DNA of 64,000 nucleotides from Macrostomum lignano (taxonomy: Eukaryota). The DNA is taken from assembly GCA_002269645.1 (NCBI GenBank), contig NIVC01001935.1, positions 1 to 64,000 on the forward strand, given 5' to 3'. Shown piece after piece: positions 9,047-19,776 of this stretch. The position numbers and the translations under genes were made by a program. The notes under the pieces are model-generated. The model ran no database searches and had not been told where the DNA came from. It saw only the letters and a program-made list of their open reading frames with translations. Every line of letters begins with the position of its first letter. Position 1 is the stretch's first letter.

Positions 9047-10340
9047 TGTTATAATGTAACTAGAAGAAATAAATAATATACAAGAGCGAGGAGCCCGGCT
9101 AGAAAAGGGCATCAGATTCATAAACCATATCTGTGCCTCATTGAATATACAACATGGCGTCGCGACGCGGGAGAGTAACCTCAGCGTCACCTCCTAGTGG
9201 ATTAACCGTGCCGACAGCAGAGATGCCTAAGATCGACATCCGCTCAGTTCCAAAATTCGACTATTCGACTTAGAGTCGCAGAGGAACTTGTTTTCTCAAT
9301 GGATGCAGACATGACAAAGTTTCGAGATTATCTCAGGACTAGCTGACCTAGGAGAGAGTGCCCGGAAGAAACGGCTACGACTATGCGCTCTTCAAACTGC
9401 CCTTAGCCTAGAAACTCTTAAAGTTGTGGAGAATCTGCCAAACCTTACTGAGAAGACAAAAAACGACCCTGACAGTATCCTGAAAGCACTCGAGTCATTC
9501 ATCACGGGTGAGAGAAACGAAACTTGTACGTAGGGAATTTTGGCTACGCAATCAGCAGGCCGACGAATCTTTTAGCAACTGGTTTCTGACACTAAAAGAA
9601 ATCGCCAGCAGCTGTAACTTTGCTAAGGTGTTGCGCCAACTGCGAGGCCTATCAGTTACGAGATCGAATCGTAACTGGACACCGAGATAGCAAAGTAGTA
9701 GAGCGACTGTTAGAAGAAGGGAACAGCCTGACCTTAGATAAAGCTAAACACATATGCGAATCGGCAGAGTCTTCAAAGAAGAAGTGCGCAATCATGACAG
9801 GCGAACACGATTTTTATCAGCCATACGAGGCCAGTCAACATATCGAAGAAGTAAGTCAACCGTAACTCGTTTAGCAGCAGACGGCTCGGACAAGGCAAAG
9901 CCGAAAAAGCACCAAATGCCAATAGACCGTGCAAATTCTGCGGGCGCCTACATGAGCACAAAAAAGTGCCAAGCGCGGAAAAATACTTGCGCAAAATGTG
10001 GCAAAGCCAATCACTTTGCCAAGCAGTACACATCAGCGAAAACAGGAAGAGTCAGCACAGTTGATTCAGAGTTAGTAGCGATATTAGCAGCTACTGAAAA
10101 CCAGCCCCAACTGGTAAAAATCAAAGTAAAGTGCTAATCTACATGTTCCACATTACACTTCCTACCTGACACAGGGGCCAGCATCAACGCCATCTCAGAA
10201 AAAGAGCTTCAGCTAATCGGTGAAGAACCGGAGAACCTACCAGACAGCGAGATTCGACCAAAATCAGTAGATGGACGTGAACTAGTGAACCTCGGGAGTC
10301 TAATGGTTGAAATGCGCATGGGAGCGACAACTCAACCAAC
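9047..10340 (+). mobile_element. Degenerate Ty3/gypsy 5' portion (possible LTR, PBS, gag, CCHC knuckle, protease)
   Basis: ...TACAACA|TGGCGTCGCG LTR/PBS-like junction at 9154. Gag-like NQQADESFSNWFLTLKEIASSCNF and LRDRIVTG; CAKCGKANHF knuckle; PDTGAS protease motif; stops and frameshifts. Confidence 0.7.
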
Positions 10341-10499
10341 ACTCAAATTTATGTCACAACTGGACGCTGTCGCTGTGCGATGCAAGAATTCTGGGATTGA
10401 ATCTAGACAAGAAGTGTCAGCCCTGAAAAAAGTTGGAGAACGTTGCGGTTGCAAACTATGATGTGGAATCGATGAATCGATGCGATTTTTGATCGAACA

Positions 10500-10861
10500 G
10501 CTCAGGCTTTCTTTGGTTAGTTTAAAGGGTCGCCGCTACGACATCTCGCTTGTACGGCAATCAGCATTGCTCTATCTGATCAGTAGTTCCGCCTACTCGT
10601 AACTTAAAAAACTTTTGCCGTTGCCTCATCCCAGAATTCTGCAACTGCAACTCGTCGGTACTGGGGAAGTTGGAACAGAAACTGATGCAGCACAACTGAT
10701 TCCGTCTGTTTTCCAGCCTATCAGAAGTGCAGCGTTTTGATGTTTGACGAAATTTATGTTCAGCCGTCAGTTCGATTCCGCTGCCGCCATCTTATGGGAC
10801 GATCAGCTGACGATCCGAGCCAGGCGGCTCGTACAATTTTAGCTATAATGATCAAGCCTTT
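10500..10861 (+). pseudogene. P-element/THAP9-like transposase fossil (resumes at 16683-16722 after the retrotransposon)
   Basis: AYS*LKKLLPLPHP and FDEIYVQPSVRF...ARTILAIMIKPL join across the insertion to FG*RPFIIRLLP. Confidence 0.6.
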
Positions 10862-10962
10862 GCCGGGGCTGTTGCCCCCAGGACCCCGGGTCCTGCACGT
10901 AATGGCGTGGTGAACTATCTGTGCAGTATGAGACTGGTATGGCCTTTATCCCAGCCAGCGAT

Positions 10963-11109
10963 GCTCACACCTGCCTCCCCTGGCGGGCTGATAGCTCAAG
11001 AGACTCTGTCTCCTGATTTTCACCTTGCAAGGCGCACTTCGAAGGGTACTCGTCCCGTGGGTGTTAAGGCAGGCCCCCTTGGGCCCTGCCGAGCTGATTC
11101 GTTGGCGCC
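10963..11109 (+). ncRNA. Predicted HDV-like self-cleaving ribozyme in the retrotransposon 5' UTR
   Basis: Manual fold: P1 GCUCAC 10963-68/GUGGGU 11057-62; P2 CGAA 11040-43/UUCG 11098-101 plus GGCGC 11031-35/GCGCC 11105-09; P3 GGG 11044-46/CCC 11054-56; L3 UACUCGU; P1.1 AC 11048-49/GU 11063-64; P4 11068-11090; J4/2 GCUGA with putative catalytic C11094. Confidence 0.75.
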
Positions 11110-11337
11110 GGGTCCTGGTGTGACCATAAACGCACCCTCTAATGTCCCAGTGTAACTCCGTGCTGATGGACGCTTGGCCAGGGAGTAGTCTGGTCGCTAA
11201 CGGTTCCCCTTGCGCTTTTGGGTCCCCCCGCAGGGTGGTATTTTGCTTTTTGGGGGCCTGCCGCTTGGTTTGGGGTTGCGGCCTTGCGGCTCTTTGCCTG
11301 TGTTCTGCAGGAAGTCCCACCTTTTTACTTCCAGCCA

Positions 11338-12857
11338 ATGGCTTCTAACCGAAGTAACAAACCGGCTGTGGATGACACAGTGCCTCCGGCCTCGGCTGGG
11401 GCCGTGGACTCCTCGGCCATACCACCTGCTACCATCGGGGACGCCTCGGCGAGACCCGTGGAGCCAACTCTGAGCGGTGCCTCCGAGAAGACACCTGCTA
11501 CTCCAGCTGCTAAGAAACGCAGCACCACCTCTGGAGCTGCCCGCCGTCGACTTAACAAGGCGAGGCGGGCCAAGGAGGGCGGAAGCCAAACCGGTGCCAG
11601 GGGCCAACGGCCCGCGGCAGCGGAAGCTTCCCAGTCTGGGGCGGTGGCGGAAGAGGGCCTCGAGCCCACGGAAGCCCCTGCCCAGGATAGGGAGGCCGAT
11701 GCAGCCGGGAGGGTGGACAGCCCACCTGAAGAAAGCTCCACTGACCCCCGGGCCTCCTACGCTGATGCGGCAAAGAGGCAACCGGCGGTTGTCATCCTGG
11801 GAAAGGACGCGCGCCTGTCTCCCGATCAGCTGAAGCAGGTGAGAAGTGCCGTTGATGGCCTCCTGTGGAAGCAAACTCTGAAGGGCACGCCTCTGAACAT
11901 TCATTCGAATGCGACGAGGGACTCGTGCCTTCTCATTTGGCCCAGTGATGCTGACTCGGGTCGGCGGCTCCTTGAGCTGCTGCCCGAGCAGAGCTGGGAC
12001 CTCAACCTAGCCTTCTGCAGAGAGGACGAGCGCCCCCGGACCAAGAGGCATCGAATCTGGGTCCCGGCCAGGAGCGTTGTTACCTCTGCTGACGAGCTCC
12101 GGAAAGGACTGCTAGCAGTCAACCGGGAGCTTCCCGCCGCGGGCCTTGTGGTGCATGACACCCTTAAGCGCACCGACGGCACTGGCTTCACAGCCATCCT
12201 GGGGCTGTCGGACGCCTGGATGAGGCGTTATCCACACGGCAGCTTCATCAACGTCGGCCTTTGGAAGCTGCGCATCCGCTCCTACGAGGCCGACCCTCCC
12301 GTGGCAGTGAGCAGGGCGGGCGGGATGCGGAGGCGGCCGGGGCCGAGGCGCAAGCCTCTGCTCAGACTGCCAAAGCAAACCGCCCTGCCCGGCAGCACGG
12401 CCGCGCGGGCAAAGCTGAGCGCGCTGCTGAGGGCGGAGGCGACCGACGCCCGGCGCGCAGCACCAAGCGGCGCGGCCTGTACCAGCGTGCAGCTGAGGCA
12501 GTCCGTACCGCCAAAATCTCCCAGCTGAGGCGAGAGGTCGCCGGGACGCCTAGGCGCACCAGTTCGTCCAGGGAGGGTGGGGACGTCCCAGCTGGGCCCA
12601 ACCCCTCGGGGCAGGGCCGACTGGAGACGGACCCGCCTGCCCAGGCGGCTGGCTGCTCCAGGGCATTGGGCCAATCTGAGGCGGAGGACCCCATGGATGG
12701 TGGGCAAAGGGCGGCGAACGCTGCCTACTGCCTTCCGGCCAATCGGGGGCCTTTTGCTGAAGAAGAGCCCATGGACACCGGCGACCCCGACCCGAAGCCG
12801 GTGAGCGCCGAGGAGGAGGAGGAACTCCTGGCGGCTGCAACATCCGATCTGCAATGA
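11338..12857 (+). CDS. Retrotransposon ORF1 (gag-like; probable frameshift near 12300-12360)
   Basis: ATG at 11338 with a SYADAAKR motif. A second frame (12261-12857) ends at a TGA overlapping the ORF2 ATG. Confidence 0.7.
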
Positions 12858-15800
12858 TGCCAGCGACTACCTGGTGTCTGCAGATCAACACCCAGCACTG
12901 CGTGGCGGCGTCGGTCAACCTGATGCGCACGGCAGAGCAACAGCTTCCGGGCCTGGTCTTCGTACAGGAGCCCTGGATGACTAAAGGTAAGCCAAATAAT
13001 GTGCCATCTGGCTACCACTGTTTTTGCATGGCGGGCTCTCAGCCTCGCCCAAGATCTCTGGTCTTTGCTGCAAAAGCTTTTGAGGCATGGATGAGACCTG
13101 ATCTCTCGACTGGGGACATCTGTGTTGTTCAAATCAATAACCTCATTCCCAATAAACCTGTGCTGGTAGCTTCTGCCTATTTCCCGGGCGATGCCCCAGT
13201 TGTCTGCGACGCGTTAGTCAACCTTACTGACTATGCTGCGTCCCATCGGTTCGAGCTGCTCATTGCAGGGGATGTGAACGCACACCACCTGCATTGGGGC
13301 AGCAAGAACATCAATAGCAGAGGCGAGGAGCTGCTGGCCTATGTCAGCAGCACTAACCTCAACTTCTGTAACGTGGGCAATGCACCAACGTTCAATAATG
13401 GGCGGTGGGCCGAAGTCATCGACACCACCATCGCCTCACCCGGACTGCTTTCCGCAGTTACGGGCTGGCGAGTGTGGGACGAGGACTCGCTCTCGGACCA
13501 CCGCTTTATCCGCTTTTGCATTGGGCCGACCAAGCAAAAGCCTAAGTCACTTGGAGTCGGAACGTCAGGAACACCGATTGGGCCGCCTTTGGCTCGAAGC
13601 TGAGCCGCGGCCTTCGGGATCTTGACCCCCCAGTGACCTCTCTGACTGCCAGGTGGTGGACGATCTCGCCTCCTCCCTGGGCGGGGCGATCACCACTGCC
13701 TTTGAAGCAGCCTGCCCCCTAAAGGCCTATAAAGGCAAGAAATCTGCTCCCTGGTGGAACCCAGAGCTCGGGGCCCTTCGGCGCCGAGCCAGGACCCTCC
13801 AAAGGCGAGCGCTCAAAACCAAAGACCCATCTGACAGAGAGGCCTATACCCGTGCGATCCACGAGTTTAAGGGCCAAGTCAGAAGGGCCAAGACGGCCAA
13901 GTGGCGCCAATATTGCGAAGGGCTTGAGGGCTCTCGCCCCGTAGCCCGCGTGGTTAAGGCACTCACTAATGACCGTTTTTCTAAACTCTCTGTTGTGAAG
14001 AGACCTGACGGCTCGGTCACAGAGAGTTCGGAAGAGACTCTAGAGCTCATGCTCAACAGTTTTTTCCCTAAATCTCCGACTCAGCAGGGCCCGCCCGACC
14101 ACACAGTGGGAGGGCAAGGCCTAGCAAAGTCTATGATCACCAAAGACCGCATTATTAGAGCGGCAAGGTCCTTTAACCCGTTCAAGGCGCCTGGGCCCGA
14201 CGGCATCTACCCAGCGTTCTTGCACGAGGCGGTGAAAAACCACCGCTTCCTGGACCTGCTCTGTCGTCTCCTTCGAGCTTGTATGGAGCTGGGCTATGTA
14301 CCAGTTGCATGGAGAGAGGCCCGGGTGGTCTTTATCCCCAAGCCTGGAAAGAGCGACTACCAATCGGTGAAGGCCTTCAGGCCTATCAGCCTCACTTCTT
14401 TCTGCCTCAAGCTCCTCGAGAGACTGGTGCTTTGGCGCCTACTTTCGGTCGAGCTGAAGCGCTTCCCACTCTCGCAGAACCAGCACGCCTTCCGCGCGGG
14501 CAGGTCAACCGAGAGTGCTCTCCATGTCATTGTTGACTTCCTGGAGAGGGCCGTTCTTGGCAGCGGCTTTGCCCTCTCGCTTTTCCTGGACATTGAGGGG
14601 GCCTTCGACAACGTCATCTTCGAGGCCTTTTGCAGAGCCCTGGAATCCAGGGCCACGCACCCTCACCTTGTCCGGTGGATCATGTTCATGATCCGAAACC
14701 GCACTGTTGTGGCCCACCTGAGCGGCAGCTCTCTTTCGGTGCCTGTCCTGAAAGGGGGCCCCCAGGGCGGCGTTCTCACCCCCGTTCTCTGGAACATGGT
14801 CATGGATGAGTTGCTTTGCAGTGATCTCCACGACCCCATTCTCAAGGTGGGCTATGCCGATGATGTGACCGCGATATGCGCGGGCCCCTCGGTTGATACC
14901 ATCAGAGACCTTCTGCAGGGCTTTCTGGGACGAGCGGAGCGTTGGGCAGACCAATGTGGCCTTAGACTCTCAGAGTCGAAAACCACAGCAGTCATGTTTA
15001 CCAACAAACTGCTCTGGACCATTAAGCCCCTCACCCTCTATGGAAAGAATATTTCCATGGAGAAGCAGGTCCGCTGCCTGGGCCTCACTCTGGACCACAG
15101 GCTTAACTGGACTCCGCACATTCAAACTAAAGCCAAAAAAGCCCTGGCTGTACTGGCTCAGATCAGGCGCGCCGTGGGCACCACCTGGGGGCTCACCCCC
15201 AGGAAGCTGTGGTGGATTTACACTGCCATCATCCGCCCCTCGATCAGTTACGCCAGCCTCGTGTGGGCTAGCGGCCTGAGCGTCAAGAGCAACCTCGACG
15301 CTCTCTACAAAATCCAGGGCAGAGCCTGCCGCATGACTATGGGCGCTCCACCCTCTACTCCTTTTGAAGGCATGAATGCTTCCTCTGTGCCCCTCCTTTG
15401 GATATTTATATCAAAGGAGAGGCGGCGAAGAGCACCCGGCGTCTTCTGGATGCTGGGGTGGCCTTCAAGAAAGTGCGGGCCTTTAAGAAGCGGTCGCTTA
15501 TCCCGCACTCTGACCTCTGCCTCAAGGCTCTCGAGGAGTGTGGCGGGCTCAACATCCTCACGGACTCGATCCCAGCCACCCTTCTCCTGAGCCAAAGGTA
15601 TAAGGTCACCATTCAGCCTCGACACGAGGCGAGTGACAGCTGGAGCGACTCTGAAGTCCACTGTTACACTGACGGCTCTATGAGGCATGGTCTTTCAGGC
15701 TTCGGAGCTTGCGTCTTCTTCAAGGGAGAAGTGGTGTGGAGCTACTCCCAGCACACTGGGCTCAACTCCAGTGTTTTTCAGAGCGAGGTGCTTGCCATCA

Positions 15801-16555
15801 GCTCCTGCGCGGCAGAGCTGCGCCGAAGGCAGCTTAGCGGCCGGAAATTTATTTTTCACTCTGACAGCCAAGCAGCCCTTCGGGCCCTCTGCCGCAGCAC
15901 CGCCAGCTCCAGGTCCGTCCTGGACTGCAACACCCAGCTCAACGGGCTTGCGCTAGGCAACCAGGTGGAGCTCAGATGGATCCCGGGCCACGCCGGCTTC
16001 CTCGGCAACGAGCGCGCTGACCTGCTGGCCAAGGCTGGCTCCGCCGGCGCGCTATTGGGGCCGGGCCCGGGTGCCCCCATCCCCGCCTCGGTGATCAATT
16101 CCCGCGTTAAGCGCTGGGCTGACTCCGAGCATCTCCGCAGGTGGCACGACACCCGGAATTGTAGGCAATCCCGTGCTGCCGTCCCCTGTCCCTCTCCTCT
16201 CCTGCGTAGAGCCCTCCTCAGGCTCAACCGCAGAGACCTCAGAGCAGTTAGCATGGCCCTCTCCGGGCATGGCTGCTTCTCTCGCCACCGCTTCCTTCAG
16301 GGCCAAGTACCCGAGGAGCGGTGCCCCTTCTGCCGCTCAGGCAGTGAAAACGCCGAGCATTTTATCTGCCACTGCCCGGTTTTCACCAGGGCCAGGCTTA
16401 CTCACCTCGGGCCAAACCCGGTTCTCTCCGACGTTTGCAGGCCCGAGAGCATCCCGCTGCTCGCCCGGTACCTCAGGGACACCGGACGAGCTGATTTCTT
16501 CCCCACCGTCGGTGAGGAGGACCGCGCTGCAGGCGAGACCGACGGGTCCCCCTGA
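12854..16555 (+). CDS. Retrotransposon ORF2: AP endonuclease, reverse transcriptase, RNase H, CCHC (frameshifts near 13550, 13635, 15380)
   Basis: FVQEPW, AGDVNAHH, SLSDH; PWWNPEL, KAPGPDG, FRPISLTS, GGPQGGVLTP, GYADD; CYTDGS, QSEVLA, SDSQAAL, GNERAD; CPFC...HFICHC. Confidence 0.9.
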
Positions 16556-16724
16556 GCGACACCACTTCAACGGAAGTCGTTGGTCGCCAGGGGCTAGCGG
16601 AATGGGCGGTCTCCTCCGCCTCCTCGCTGCATCCGCCGGACGCCCCCTGCAGCTAAGTCAAGTAAGTCAAGATCAAGCCTTTATTTGGATGAAGACCATT
16701 CATTATTCGACTTTTGCCAACTTA

Positions 16725-17385
16725 CGAGGGGTGCTCTGAAAGTATCCGGATGCAGCCAGATGGCTTGTTTTAGGGTTTAGATTTTTTATTATCATAAAAA
16801 AATTCGATAGTACCCCCACCCAGGAATACGCAGCAGCCATGGAACTCTCTCGTGAGCATTTTAGAGCCATGGTTTATTATGACTACAAAATGGGTTTATC
16901 ACCCCAAGAATCACTAAATCGGTTTCAAACTGTTTTCAAGACTCTGCACCATCGCGGACTACAGTTTTTGACTGGTATGTGGAATTCAGACGCGGTCGGC
17001 AGCACTCCAAGATGAGCCCCGTTGTGGCAGGCCTGCAACCGCAGTTACCCAGCAAAACATTAATGAGGCAGAGCGGCTTATCTTGGACGATCCTCGAATC
17101 ACCTACCGCTAGCTCGAGGCAAGCCTGTAGATTGGATCGGGGGCACTTAATGAGATTCTGCACCAACACCTTTGAGTGCAAAAGAGGTGTGCCCGGTGGA
17201 TCCCCCACTGCCTCACTGCTGACCAGAAACATGAACCGGAGTGGTGCCGGTTCATGTTCACCAAATTCAGCAGTGGACACCAGCGGTCTGTTTTTGCCAT
17301 TCTAACAGGTGATGAAACATGGATTTACAATTTCGACCCCGAGACAAAGCGTCAATCATCGCAGTGGTGCTTTCCCGACCAGGGT
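16725..17385 (+). mobile_element. Truncated mariner transposon (left TIR plus N-terminal half of the transposase)
   Basis: TA|CGAGGGGTGCTCTGAAAGT terminus; ATG 16839 MELSREHFRAM; EFRRGR, CARWIPHCLT and first catalytic Asp in TGDETWIY. Confidence 0.85.
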
Positions 17386-18719
17386 TTCGCCAAGCGACAT
17401 GCAAGAAGTGTGGCAAATAGGGTCACATTGCTTCAGCATGCCGTACTTTGAGTTCATCAGTGCAATGTGCTGAAATTCCAATCGACAGAATACAGACCAC
17501 AGATTTCACCTCAACTATTAACACCATAGTGTCCGTTAAAAACGAAACATTCAGAGGCTCGCTGTGGTTTAACAACTTTCACATCGGAAACCTCACGCCT
17601 TGCCACAGGATTTGGCCCTATTTGGCTCACCGAGATTCACTCATCCGTCACAAAAGTACTGAAGGTGTATGCAGGCCTCTGTTCTCGATGTAATAAAGAA
17701 TGTAGTAATGAAAAACGATGATGGCAGAAGTGTAATTGGAGCAATATTCGTAGGCCAACTTAGCGATCAAAGCAGACTTGGAATGAACTACATCAGACCT
17801 CTTCAGCTTATACCGTCGCAAGAGGTAACTTGCACTCCGGTCACATGCAGCGACATCGAAAGGTTAATTGCCAGCTTCCGTCTCAAAACTGATGCTTCTT
17901 TCAAAGGCATGTGCTATCCAGCCAGGTCACTACCGTCTTCCATGAAGACCATAGCTAGTTGAAACGGAGCTGAGGAAACTCCAGGCAGCCGGAATCATTT
18001 ACCCGGTGCAAAACCCGGTCGTCTCCTGTCCAATCGTTCTAGTGCTCAAGCCAAAAGGTTCTATTCGACTCCGTAACGCTAAATAAGATCATCGATGCTG
18101 ACCGCTACAAGCTGCCCAATTTGGAGGAAATACTGCAGAATATCCCTCATTCGAACTTCTACTCGGTAATTGATCTCCAAGACGGCTACTTACAGATGGC
18201 GTTGTCAGAAGAGAGCCAGCGACTTAAGTGCATCTCAACTCACATAAAATATTTCGCGTTCCGAAACATGCGATTTGGCACTTCCGCTACACCTCTAATT
18301 TTTCAGGAGGTAGTGGGCAAATTGCTACGAGATATTCCATGCGTTGCCTCGTAGGATGACATCATCGTCGGCACGCCAACTCTCACTGAACATCACAAAA
18401 TACTATTTCAAGTTAAAAGTCAACGCTAGCTTTGCACGGGTTCAAAATTAACGTTTGTAAGTCTCAGAAGTGTCAAAAGTTTTTGGGATTCCTACAGCAG
18501 GAAAGGAATCTTCGACCCGATCCCATACAAATGAACGCACTTGAAAACCTTCGTCAGCCGCGGACAAGGATCAACTAAGAAGTGCAATTTCTACGCTCAG
18601 ACATTATGGGTTGTTCTACAAAGACTTCTTGTTGACTATTAGACCACTAGGCATTAAAACGCGAACTTGGCACAGAAACGAAGCAGGCCTCCGTCAATAA
18701 AAAATGTTCCGAACTTCAA

Positions 18720-19776
18720 TCTAAATTTGGCTTAAAGCAGACTTAACACGAGAAAAAGAAGAAAAAAATTTCACTGCGAGAAGGCAAATCGCGCCAGTAG
18801 AGCGCGACGGGGGTTTAAAAACACCCCCTGCCACCCAAAGGGGGGGGGGCAGGCGGCGATGTACAATTAACGCGCTGGGCACTAAAGCCGGTTTGTAATT
18901 CTTCTTAAGCCTCTTAGCGAAGTTCTGGACACAGGTGAAACGCAGTCTCTGCTCGCTCTCGTAAGCGAAGTTGACAGACTTCCCTTGCGGCCGGCTGCAG
19001 TCATGGATTAAGCGAACGCCACCGTTGGACTTCGGCAGCGCACCAAGGGCGCTGACTATGCGAGGTTTGTCACCAGCAGCACAGAGACGATAACGACCGA
19101 GACGAAGCTCATTAACAATCTGATGCGCGACCCTGTCTTGGTGCTTAAAAACCGAAGAGTAGTTTTCCACCTCAACCAACTCATTGCCACGCATCTGACG
19201 ATCGGTGATGGGAAAGCCACTAGCAACGCCATCAAGGATAAAAGCCATCCGACCGGGCGGGAGATCCAGCTTGGACAACTCCGCCTGCCACTCGGCCAGA
19301 TTGAGATCAGAGGATAAAACAGGAGGAATAAAATTCGCGCTATGATCTAGTCAGTGTTGCGGTTTCTCCTCACCGCTCGATTCGTCGCGGTGGAAGGCTG
19401 CCTCAGAGTGCGCCAGGCCGCAACTTCGGCAGCGATGCAGGAACCGACGGCTCTTTCGTTCAAAGCCGTGTATCCTGTTGTAGTAGAAGCAAACCAGTTG
19501 ATTGCGCTTCTGGGCACCACCCCCCGATTGCTGCTTCTGGGGAGTCATGAGGTACGCCGCAACCAGACTCAGGTCCGAGCTGTGCGACTCCCACTTGCCA
19601 TCAGTCGCTTGGCTGAGCCGGCACTCGTCATCAAATCTCATGACACGGCTCTTGTCGAAGCCCAGGTCCAACAACTCGCCAATGCGTGCGGTGTACCTGA
19701 GATAGTCTCTGAGCTCTGCCACATCCACGCTCTGCCACGCTTTCCATGACGACGATTTCCATGATTCGGTCAACAT
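18720..19776 (-). mobile_element. DIRS-order (Ngaro-like) retrotransposon fragment: gag-like ORF and RT N-terminus
   Basis: CFYYN...RFLHRCRSCGLAH zinc-finger-like gag. SALGALPKSNGGVRLIHDCSRPQGKSVN matches the DIRS/Ngaro RT motif-1/2 pattern. No tyrosine recombinase is retained. Confidence 0.7.

What the first reader, a model, noticed from the sequence alone, without database searches (positions are those of the whole stretch)
10963..11109. Complete HDV-like ribozyme fold with a compensatory A-U pair in P1.1
Seen: every element of the nested double pseudoknot is present in order. These are a G.U wobble at the first P1 pair (G10963.U11062), a 62-nt J1/2 with its own hairpins, P2, P3 GGG/CCC, a 7-nt L3 UACUCGU with U at position 1 and G at position 6, P4, and J4/2 GCUGA. 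The usual L3 CC / J1/4 GG pairing is replaced by AC / GU, so both partners changed together (A11048-U11064, C11049-G11063), which supports a conserved structure. P1 is 6 bp rather than the usual 7. Established: HDV-like ribozymes process the 5' ends of R2, RTE and several other non-LTR clades. Inference: an active variant ribozyme, possibly undescribed in this lineage.
Basis: partly seen in the sequence, partly recalled or inferred. Interest (0 to 1): 0.8.

Follow-up and report, generated by a model that had tools for sequence, protein, structure and literature searches.

The report
HDV-like ribozyme in flatworm retrotransposon

Summary
The 3' two-thirds of the fold (11031-11109: P2, P3, L3, P1', P1.1, P4, J4/2) recurs at the same place in two related elements (L002, L007). 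P2, P4 and P1.1 covary, and L3 (U..CGU), GGG/CCC and a J4/2 C-U-G are conserved. This is a genuine HDV-like ribozyme family in the 5' UTR of an APE-RT-RNaseH non-LTR retrotransposon (10862-16670, 12-bp target-site duplication), most likely from Macrostomum lignano.

- The G/U-rich P1' finds such a partner by chance about once per 128 nt.
- 10963-68 is homologous to the 3' strand of an internal helix of a large, conserved J1/2 peripheral domain.

By homology with L007, whose perfect 6-bp P1 starts at contig base 1, the P1 strand is 10895-10900 and the predicted cut is 10894/10895. A 4-nt linker, a P1.2 closing helix and an extended P2 follow, as in Agam-2-type ribozymes.

In this copy that P1 has an A x G mismatch and the ORFs carry frameshifts, so activity is doubtful. 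No Rfam model matches. This is a new member of a known kind.

The parts
10850..10861 (+). Target-site duplication, 5' copy (GATCAAGCCTTT)
   Evidence: Identical 12-mer at 16671-16682. The flanks join into one decayed P-element/THAP9-like reading frame.
10862..16670 (+). Non-LTR retrotransposon copy: 5' UTR, ORF1, then ORF2 with APE, RT and RNase H. Degenerate.
   Evidence: Pfam hits to Exo_endo_phos_2, RVT_1 and RNase_H. ORFs are split by frameshifts. The 3' end is a (TAAGTCAAG)n tail. Macrostomum lignano UniRef proteins are 99-100% identical to parts of ORF2.
10862..10894 (+). 33-nt segment between the target-site duplication and the predicted cleavage site; origin unknown
   Evidence: No counterpart in L007, whose contig starts at the equivalent of 10895. 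No significant similarity elsewhere in the element or the window. Contains the hairpin CAGGACC/GGUCCUG.
10895..10900 (+). P1 5' strand by homology (GCACGU); predicted cleavage between 10894 and 10895
   Evidence: Aligns with L007 nt 1-6 (GCCUGC), which pairs perfectly with L007's P1' GCAGGC. In the window 5 of 6 positions pair; A10897 x G11060 is a mismatch.
10901..10904 (+). AAUG linker between P1 and P1.2
   Evidence: Identical and unpaired in the independent MFE folds of the window and of L007.
10905..10914 (+). P1.2 closing helix of the J1/2 domain, 5' strand
   Evidence: Pairs with 11019-11028, 9 of 10 positions with one U x U. The L007 equivalent is 11-19/154-162. Two positions show both-sided changes.
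10915..11018 (+). Interior of the J1/2 peripheral domain.
   Evidence: The independent MFE structures of the window and of L007 share 25 of 46 pairs in the same alignment columns. Shuffled controls share 0.27 on average, maximum 7. RNAalifold gives 9 pairs with both-sided changes.
11019..11028 (+). P1.2 closing helix, 3' strand, followed by the AA linker at 11029-30
   Evidence: The spacing 'GC-AA-G' before P2 is the same in the window and L007.
11031..11043 (+). P2 5' strand: distal GGCGC 11031-35, internal loop, proximal CGAA 11040-43
   Evidence: Pairs with 11098-11101 and 11105-09. The proximal part covaries with L002 and L007 (A-U to G-C and G-C to A-U).
11044..11056 (+). P3 (GGG/CCC) enclosing L3 (UACUCGU)
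   Evidence: P3 is invariant. L3 fits U-N-Y-Y-C-G-U in the window, L002 and L007.
11057..11062 (+). P1 3' strand (GUGGGU)
   Evidence: Identical in L002; GCAGGC in L007.
11063..11064 (+). J1/4 (GU), pairing with L3 A11048 and C11049 to form P1.1
   Evidence: Window A-U and C-G; L007 C-G and U-A; L002 U x U and C-G.
11068..11090 (+). P4 hairpin
   Evidence: A stable hairpin of unrelated sequence sits at the same place in L002 (117-144) and L007 (201-226).
11091..11097 (+). J4/2 (GAGCUGA) with the candidate catalytic C11094
   Evidence: C-U-G is conserved: L002 GCACUGA, L007 (UA)GCUGC. The catalytic role is inferred by position.
11098..11109 (+). P2 3' strand
11128..11215 (+). Conserved downstream 5' UTR block with two hairpins; function unknown
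   Evidence: 24 nt are identical to L002. The hairpin GGCCAGG-GAGUAG-UCUGGUC covaries in L007.
11338..12528 (+). ORF1, C-terminal part frameshifted
   Evidence: Homologues P0001 to P0003. The conserved C-terminus continues in another frame.
16671..16682 (+). Target-site duplication, 3' copy

Best explanation
The region holds a large HDV-like self-cleaving ribozyme belonging to the 5' UTR of a non-LTR retrotransposon with APE, RT and RNase H domains and a separate ORF1.

Proposed layout: P1 5' strand 10895-10900; AAUG linker; a structured J1/2 peripheral domain of about 125 nt closed by a P1.2 helix (10905-14 with 11019-28); AA linker; an extended two-part P2; P3 and L3; P1'; a 2-bp P1.1 (AC/GU); P4; and J4/2 with C11094 as the general-acid cytosine.

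Inferred mechanism, by analogy with R2, L1Tc, Baggins and RTE ribozymes: the element is transcribed, probably as part of a longer read-through transcript. The ribozyme folds co-transcriptionally. The P1.2 domain pinches P1 and P2 together, and the RNA cuts itself immediately 5' of G10895. This releases an element RNA with a defined 5'-OH end, which serves as mRNA and as template for reverse transcription.

This particular copy is a decayed insertion. Its P1 is weakened by A10897 x G11060 and it may cleave poorly or not at all.
For: Shown:
- The core is conserved with covariation in L002 and L007: two double changes in proximal P2, both P1.1 pairs changed, P4 replaced wholesale, and invariant GGG/CCC, L3 U..CGU and J4/2 C-U-G.
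- The strict descriptor hits the window once and L007 once, against 0.07 expected per shuffled window.
- L007 has a perfect all-Watson-Crick 6-bp P1 whose G1 is the first base of the contig. It is the only perfect partner in 175 nt.
- The window segment 10895-11030 and L007 1-164 fold independently into the same architecture. They share 25 of 46 pairs in the same alignment columns, against a mean of 0.27 and a maximum of 7 in 200 shuffles. Nine pairs have both-sided changes.
- The layout (short linkers, a P1.2 helix, an extended P2, a 6-bp P1, a P1.1 of 1-2 bp) matches the 'pinch' architecture of Agam-2 ribozymes (PMC4908430).
- The element context is established: a 12-bp target-site duplication, Pfam domains, and a 3' repeat tail.

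Inferred:
- Catalysis by C11094.
- The biological role.
Against: - The homologous P1 in the window has one mismatch and three G.U pairs. Its duplex energy is only -3.3 kcal/mol, against -10.2 in L007.
- 33 nt (10862-10894) lie between the target-site duplication and the predicted cut, and they are unexplained.
- Only two relatives carry the core, and only one of them (L007) reaches the P1 strand. Its contig start may be an assembly break rather than the element's true end.
- A local hairpin (10896-10900 with 10905-09; L007 2-6 with 11-15) also covaries and competes with both P1 and P1.2.
- No Rfam HDV-type model matches the window, L002 or L007.
- There are no cleavage data.
Confidence: 0.6

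Rival explanations
1. P1 is GCUCAC 10963-68 with GUGGGU 11057-62, J1/2 is 62 nt, and the cut is at 10962/10963. The ribozyme would remove a 101-nt leader.
For: It is the only perfect 6-bp P1 inside the element that starts with G and has a G.U first pair. U is at -1. Its duplex energy, -5.8 kcal/mol, is better than that of the homologous site. R2 lineages are known to shift cut sites when P1' drifts (PMC3774820).
Against: - A match of this kind is expected by chance about once per 128 nt for this G/U-rich P1'.
- The strand lies inside a conserved inner helix of the J1/2 domain. Its L007 homologue GCCCCA cannot pair with L007's P1'.
- Freeing it costs +8.5 kcal/mol.
- The apparent L002 counterpart GCUCCU came from an unstable pairwise alignment and has a mismatch.
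- A cut there would delete 101 nt that this copy nevertheless inherited.
- Described elements cut at or upstream of their 5' end (PMC3774820).
Confidence: 0.17
2. A conserved 5' UTR structure that is not catalytic, for example a protein-binding, IRES-like or promoter-associated element. It would resemble the HDV fold without cleaving. Alternatively, a family whose ribozyme has been lost.
For: - No Rfam hit.
- P1 is imperfect in the window and unobserved in L002.
- The competing 5' hairpin covaries.
- The strict descriptor still has a chance rate of 0.07 per window.
Against: - The sequence-specific catalytic-core features are all conserved in three elements: L3 U1/C5/G6, 3-bp G-C P3, a P1.1 that covaries exactly 6 nt after P3', and a J4/2 cytosine.
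- L007 fulfils every feature, including a perfect P1 at its first base.
- HDV-like models are known to be poorly captured by sequence-weighted covariance models when J1/2 is long (my own knowledge).
Confidence: 0.13
3. Cleavage at the element's very 5' end (10861/10862), using GCCGGG as the P1 strand, so that the whole 169-nt leader is J1/2.
For: It would match the rule that the cut defines the element's 5' end as marked by the target-site duplication (PMC3774820). The first three pairs, GCC with GGU, can form.
Against: Only 4 of 6 positions pair. No homologous segment is seen in L007.
Confidence: 0.05

Closest known systems
drz-Agam-2 ribozymes of Anopheles gambiae RTE retrotransposons (large HDV-like ribozymes with a P1.2 peripheral domain; Webb et al. 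2016, PMC4908430)
   Same: - Nested double-pseudoknot core.
- A structured J1/2 domain closed by a P1.2 helix, with short single-stranded linkers (here 4 and 2 nt).
- An extended P2 (here 4-5 bp distal plus 4-7 bp proximal).
- Location in a non-LTR retrotransposon 5' UTR.
   Different: - No detectable sequence or covariance-model similarity; no Rfam hit of any kind.
- The host element has RNase H and a separate ORF1, unlike RTE.
- The J1/2 domain is larger and branched.
- P1.1 is AC/GU.
L1TcRz, the HDV-like ribozyme in the first 77 nt (Pr77) of Trypanosoma cruzi L1Tc (ingi clade) (PMC3185411, PMC6765202)
   Same: The host element has APE, RT and RNase H domains and 12-bp target-site duplications. 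[quoted passage not shown] The proposed role is release from co-transcripts.
   Different: L1TcRz is compact (77 nt) and doubles as an internal promoter. L1Tc has a single ORF. The taxon differs (a kinetoplastid against a flatworm).
R2/R4 ribozymes (Eickbush and Eickbush; PMC3774820)
   Same: - An L3/P3/P1.1 core of HDV type.
- Very long J1/2 loops (216-498 nt in silkmoths).
- P1 covaries while the core is conserved.
- P1 mismatches occur in dead copies.
- Non-templated 5' additions occur at junctions.
   Different: R2 is site-specific for 28S rDNA, has a restriction-like endonuclease and a single ORF, and often forms P1 with upstream 28S sequence. Here the target is not rDNA.
Mammalian CPEB3 ribozyme
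   Same: As far as I recall, it has L3 UUCACGU and J1/4 GU. That is the same weak P1.1 (U x U plus C-G) as L002. The window differs from it by U to A, which gives A-U. This comes from memory and was not checked against a sequence here.
   Different: It is intronic, compact, and not part of a retrotransposon.

Membership tests
HDV-like self-cleaving ribozymes | Strand order P1-(J1/2)-P2-P3-L3-P3'-P1'-J1/4-P4-J4/2-P2', forming a nested double pseudoknot | tested here: met
   My descriptor scan and pair tables find this order in the window, L002 (which lacks the P1 5' strand) and L007.
HDV-like self-cleaving ribozymes | A 3-bp P3 closing a 7-nt L3 with U at position 1 and C-G at positions 5-6 | tested here: met
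   GGG/CCC with UACUCGU, UUCCCGU and UCUCCGU.
HDV-like self-cleaving ribozymes | A P1.1 of 1-2 bp between L3 positions 2-3 and J1/4 | tested here: met
   A-U and C-G in the window; C-G and U-A in L007; U x U and C-G in L002. That P1.1 has 1-2 bp is stated in PMC4908430.
HDV-like self-cleaving ribozymes | An unpaired cytosine in J4/2 at the position of HDV C75 | tested here: met
   C11094 lies in a conserved C-U-G in all three sequences. Its catalytic role is not testable here.
HDV-like self-cleaving ribozymes | A 6-7 bp P1 without mismatches, starting with G at the cleavage site | tested here: inconclusive
L007 meets it: perfect GCCUGC/GCAGGC at nt 1.
HDV-like self-cleaving ribozymes | Mg2+-dependent site-specific self-scission | not testable with these tools
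   Requires an in vitro transcription and cleavage assay.
HDV-like self-cleaving ribozymes | Match to a curated Rfam covariance model for an HDV-type family (not defining, but the usual filing test) | tested here: not met
   No hits at gathering threshold. No HDV-type hit up to E=10 in the window 10700-11400, L002 or L007.
Large HDV-like ribozymes with a P1.2 peripheral domain (Agam-2 type) | A structured J1/2 closed by a helix with short linkers, plus an extended P2 | tested here: met
   AAUG linker, a 9-10 bp closing helix, AA linker, then a two-part P2, in both the window and L007. Structure overlap is 25 of 46 pairs, against at most 7 in shuffles.
Retrotransposon 5'-processing ribozymes | The cut coincides with, or lies upstream of, the element's 5' boundary | tested here: inconclusive
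In L007, P1 starts at contig base 1.
Non-LTR (LINE) retrotransposon with RNase H | APE, RT and RNase H domains, a target-site duplication, and a 3' repeat tail | tested here: met
   Pfam PF14529/PF03372, PF00078 and PF00075. A 12-bp target-site duplication. A (TAAGTCAAG)n tail. The exact clade (I, Nimb, LOA, ingi or other) was not determined.

The most novel reading that the evidence does not exclude
The ribozyme may not simply trim the element's 5' end. In this lineage it would sit 33-101 nt inside the transmitted element. It would be governed by a conserved, covarying 5' hairpin (10896-10900 with 10905-09; L007 2-6 with 11-15) that is mutually exclusive with P1 and P1.2. Under this reading a folding switch partitions transcripts. 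Uncleaved, full-length RNA would be the template for retrotransposition. Cleaved RNA, with a 5'-OH end and the ribozyme at its head, would be used for translation.
Probability: 0.1. Interest if true: 0.6.

Novelty: new member of a known kind. Interest (0 to 1): 0.4.

Why it matters
HDV-like ribozymes are the established 5'-processing device of several non-LTR clades (R2/R4, RTE, Baggins, L1Tc).

- **New lineage.** This family appears to be undescribed. It comes from a free-living flatworm and from an RNase-H-bearing, two-ORF element.
- **Contrast with other flatworms.** Schistosome non-LTR elements were reported to use twister variants instead (PMC8501958, abstract seen).
- **Second natural example of the peripheral domain.** It gives an independent instance of the P1.2 'pinch' architecture, with covariation support.
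- **A model organism to test it in.** Macrostomum lignano is a transgenic model, so ribozyme-dependent retrotransposition could be studied there.
- **A lesson for scans.** The catalytic core can be recognised from a single sequence. The P1 strand, and with it the cut site, cannot be assigned without relatives when P1' is G/U-rich and J1/2 is long.

Tried and rejected
- **Rfam covariance models.** I scanned the whole window at gathering threshold, and 10700-11400, L002 and L007 at E up to 10. Only spurious miRNA and CRISPR-repeat hits came back.
- **Second copy in the window.** blastn of the element against the window found none.
- **Metagenome scan.** An exact-pattern scan for the core found 4 bacterial chance matches with no P4 or J4/2 context.
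- **Genome collection scan.** A scan for the conserved downstream block found 0 matches.
- **Profile search.** A search with a 4-sequence alignment of the ORF1 domain returned nothing, not even the sequences in the alignment. This looks like tool behaviour and yields no information.
- **Purely structural descriptor.** It gave about 100 hits per strand and was useless without the L3 sequence constraints.
- **Leader homology by local alignment.** Smith-Waterman alignment of the leaders against shuffles was not significant (p = 0.04 to 0.5). Homology became clear only through structure.
The pairwise MAFFT alignment suggested that L002 GGTGCTC matches window GATGCTC. I rejected this. The three-way alignment and the L002-L007 local alignment place L002 nt 8-81 opposite L007 92-165, so the L002 contig is truncated at its 5' end and lacks the P1 strand.
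- **L001.** It has the closest ORF1, at 73% identity, but its contig begins downstream of the ribozyme region, in a tandem duplication.
- **P0005.** The contig has no retrievable DNA.
- **More distant relatives.** L008 to L012, at 34-45% ORF2 identity, show no descriptor hit.
- **Origin of the 33-nt 5' segment.** No significant match was found in the element or the window.
- **Pfam on ORF1.** No family was found.

Full report
**Observation**

- P1: GCUCAC 10963-68 with GUGGGU 11057-62.
- P3: GGG with CCC.
- L3: UACUCGU.
- P1.1: A11048-U11064 and C11049-G11063.
- P4: a stable hairpin at 11068-11090.
- J4/2: GAGCUGA with C11094.
- P2: two parts, 11031-35 and 11040-43 with 11098-11101 and 11105-09.

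Rfam finds nothing. There were no matches at gathering threshold in the whole window. At E up to 10 around the site, there was only a spurious miRNA hit.

I wrote my own descriptor. Using structure alone it is uninformative, at roughly 100 hits per strand. With the HDV-type constraints it hits the window exactly once, at 11044. Those constraints are L3 = U...CG., a 3-bp Watson-Crick P3, a 2-bp P1.1, a cytosine in J4/2, and a G-initiated 6-bp P1. Markov shuffles give 0.07 hits per 64 kb.

**Context**

The fold lies in the 5' UTR of a non-LTR retrotransposon.
- ORF1 starts at 11338.
- ORF2 carries APE (PF14529/PF03372), RT (PF00078) and RNase H (PF00075).
- The 3' end is a short (TAAGTCAAG)n tail.
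- A perfect 12-bp target-site duplication, GATCAAGCCTTT, sits at 10850-61 and 16671-82. It delimits the element as 10862-16670, inserted into a decayed P-element/THAP9-like sequence.
- ORF1 and ORF2 are broken by frameshifts or stops near 12300-12400, 13560-13650 and 15390-15400. This is a dead copy.
- UniRef proteins of Macrostomum lignano are 99-100% identical to parts of ORF2. The window is most likely from that flatworm.

**Relatives**

An ORF1 search and an ORF2 search gave two Logan contigs from one sample that carry a 5' UTR. L002 has 47% ORF1 identity. L007 has 63% ORF2 identity and is a full element.

Both contain the same core at the same place:
- L002: ...CCUCAGA GGG UUCCCGU CCC GUGGGU GU UAA [P4] GCACUGA UCUGAGG.
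- L007: ...CUCAGA GGG UCUCCGU CCC GCAGGC AG ... [P4] GCUGC UCUGAG.

What covaries and what is conserved:
- Proximal P2 shows two double changes (A-U to G-C and G-C to A-U).
- P4 is a strong hairpin of unrelated sequence in each element.
- P1.1 is A-U/C-G in the window, C-G/U-A in L007, and U x U/C-G in L002.
- GGG/CCC, L3 U-N-Y-Y-C-G-U and J4/2 C-U-G are conserved.

L007 satisfies the strict descriptor completely.

**The P1 strand and the cut site**

- P1' in the window (GUGGGU) is G/U-rich. It pairs perfectly with 10917, 10963 and 10969, and with 10827 in the flank. A G-starting perfect partner is expected about every 128 nt, so the match at 10963 carries no weight.
- In L007 the only perfect partner of GCAGGC in 175 nt is GCCUGC at contig bases 1-6.

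I folded the two J1/2 regions separately, window 10901-11030 and L007 7-164. Both give the same architecture:
- an unpaired AAUG;
- a long-range closing helix (window 10905-07 and 10909-14 with 11019-24 and 11026-28; L007 11-19 with 154-162);
- an unpaired AA;
- then distal P2.

RNAalifold on the MAFFT alignment of window 10895-11030 and L007 1-164 gives 32 consensus pairs, nine of them with both-sided changes. The two independent MFE structures share 25 of 46 pairs in identical alignment columns. Two hundred shuffles gave a mean of 0.27 and a maximum of 7. Window 10895 is therefore homologous to L007 base 1.

That is the 3' strand of an inner helix of the domain (window 10920-23 with 10966-69 and 10925-29 with 10961-65; L007 27-30 with 75-78 and 32-36 with 70-74), and one pair there is compensatory.

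The L002 'GCUCCU' that seemed to match came from an unstable pairwise alignment. L002 nt 8-81 align with L007 92-165, so that contig lacks the first 85 nt or so and says nothing about P1.

**Resulting model**

The P1 5' strand is GCACGU at 10895-10900, and the predicted cut is between 10894 and 10895. It is followed by a 4-nt linker, the P1.2-closed peripheral domain, a 2-nt linker, an extended P2, and the core.

This is the architecture shown experimentally to activate Agam-2 ribozymes by pinching P1 and P2 together. The same paper states that 6- or 7-bp P1 helices and a P1.1 of one or two base pairs are normal for the family (PMC4908430). Very long J1/2 loops, of 216-498 nt, are documented in R2 (PMC3774820).

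**Problems with the model in this copy**
- The homologous P1 is weak: G.U, C-G, A x G, C-G, G.U, U.G. Its energy is -3.3 kcal/mol, against -10.2 in L007. P1 mismatches are associated with inactive R2 ribozymes (PMC3774820).
- 33 nt (10862-10894) separate the target-site duplication from the predicted cut and match nothing else. They could be a junction addition. They could be 5' transduction from an uncleaved read-through transcript of a parent with the same weak P1. Or they could be a true 5' extension that the L007 contig misses. Non-templated 5' additions are known for R2 (PMC3774820).
- A local hairpin (10896-10900 with 10905-09; L007 2-6 with 11-15) covaries at two positions and excludes both P1 and P1.2. 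The window's A10897 and U10908 keep this hairpin while breaking P1 and P1.2. That is unexplained and leaves room for a folding switch.

**Comparison and novelty**

Described retrotransposon HDV-like ribozymes cut at the element's 5' end (R4, Dong, Baggins, L1Tc) or upstream of it (many R2) (PMC3774820).

L1Tc shares the APE, RT and RNase H layout and the 12-bp target-site duplications (PMC6765202).

A full-text search for Macrostomum plus ribozyme found no relevant paper. Schistosome non-LTR elements were reported to use twister variants (PMC8501958, abstract).

I file this as a new member of a known kind: an HDV-like ribozyme with a P1.2 peripheral domain, in a flatworm RNase-H-bearing non-LTR family. 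The ribozyme and the P1.1 variant hold. The cut site and J1/2 assignment do not, and activity of this copy is doubtful.

**Confidence**
- About 0.85 that the family encodes an HDV-like ribozyme.
- About 0.6 for the full model, including the cut at 10894/95.

Noticed in passing
window 11128-11215 (L002 228-315, L007 405-490, L001 205-290): This is the most conserved part of the 5' UTR, downstream of the ribozyme. GCTTGGCCAGGGAGTAGTCTGGTC is identical in the window and L002. It forms two hairpins. The second, GGCCAGG-GAGUAG-UCUGGUC, has a conserved GGAGUA loop and compensatory changes in L007. Its function is unknown; it could be IRES-like, a protein-binding site or an internal promoter.
   Followed up: partly
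window 10896-10909 and L007 2-15: A local 5' hairpin with a conserved AAUG loop covaries at two positions. It competes with both P1 and the P1.2 closing helix, so it could act as a folding switch or as a structure of the processed 5' end.
   Followed up: partly
window 16650-16682 and L007 5950-5965: The element ends in TAAGTCAAG repeats, and the target begins GATCAAG. The shared TCAAG suggests microhomology-guided priming or a target preference. L007 ends similarly (CAGCTAAGTCAA).
   Followed up: no
window 10300-10861 and 16683-16760: The insertion target is a decayed P-element/THAP9-like transposase sequence on the same strand (...MFDEIYVQPSVRF...ILAIMIKPL...). The retrotransposon could therefore be co-transcribed with it.
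   Followed up: no
window about 16830-17400: An ORF beginning MELSREHFRAMVYYDYKMGLSPQESL looks like a mariner-type transposase N-terminus. The region is a nest of transposons.
   Followed up: no
window 9754-10137 (+) and 18721-19278 (-): One ORF has a CCHC zinc knuckle (CAKCGKANHFAKQ), which is gag-like. Another has an RT-like motif (VRLIHDCSRP). These are probably other retroelements.
   Followed up: no
L002 2049-2130: A very stable GC-rich hairpin spans the ORF1 stop and the ORF1-ORF2 spacer. It gave several weak miRNA-model hits with E of about 1. It may relate to ORF2 translation.
   Followed up: no
L001 1-334: The closest ORF1 relative (73% identity) has a tandem duplication of about 107 nt of a 5' UTR segment homologous to L007 from about 303 to 375. 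Its contig starts inside this duplication, so its ribozyme region was not recovered.
   Followed up: partly
window 10862-10870 with 11111-11119: In the MFE fold, the first 9 nt of the element pair with the 9 nt just after P2' (9 bp, four of them G.U). This would extend the P2 stack and enclose the whole ribozyme. It is seen only in the window and may be fortuitous.
   Followed up: no
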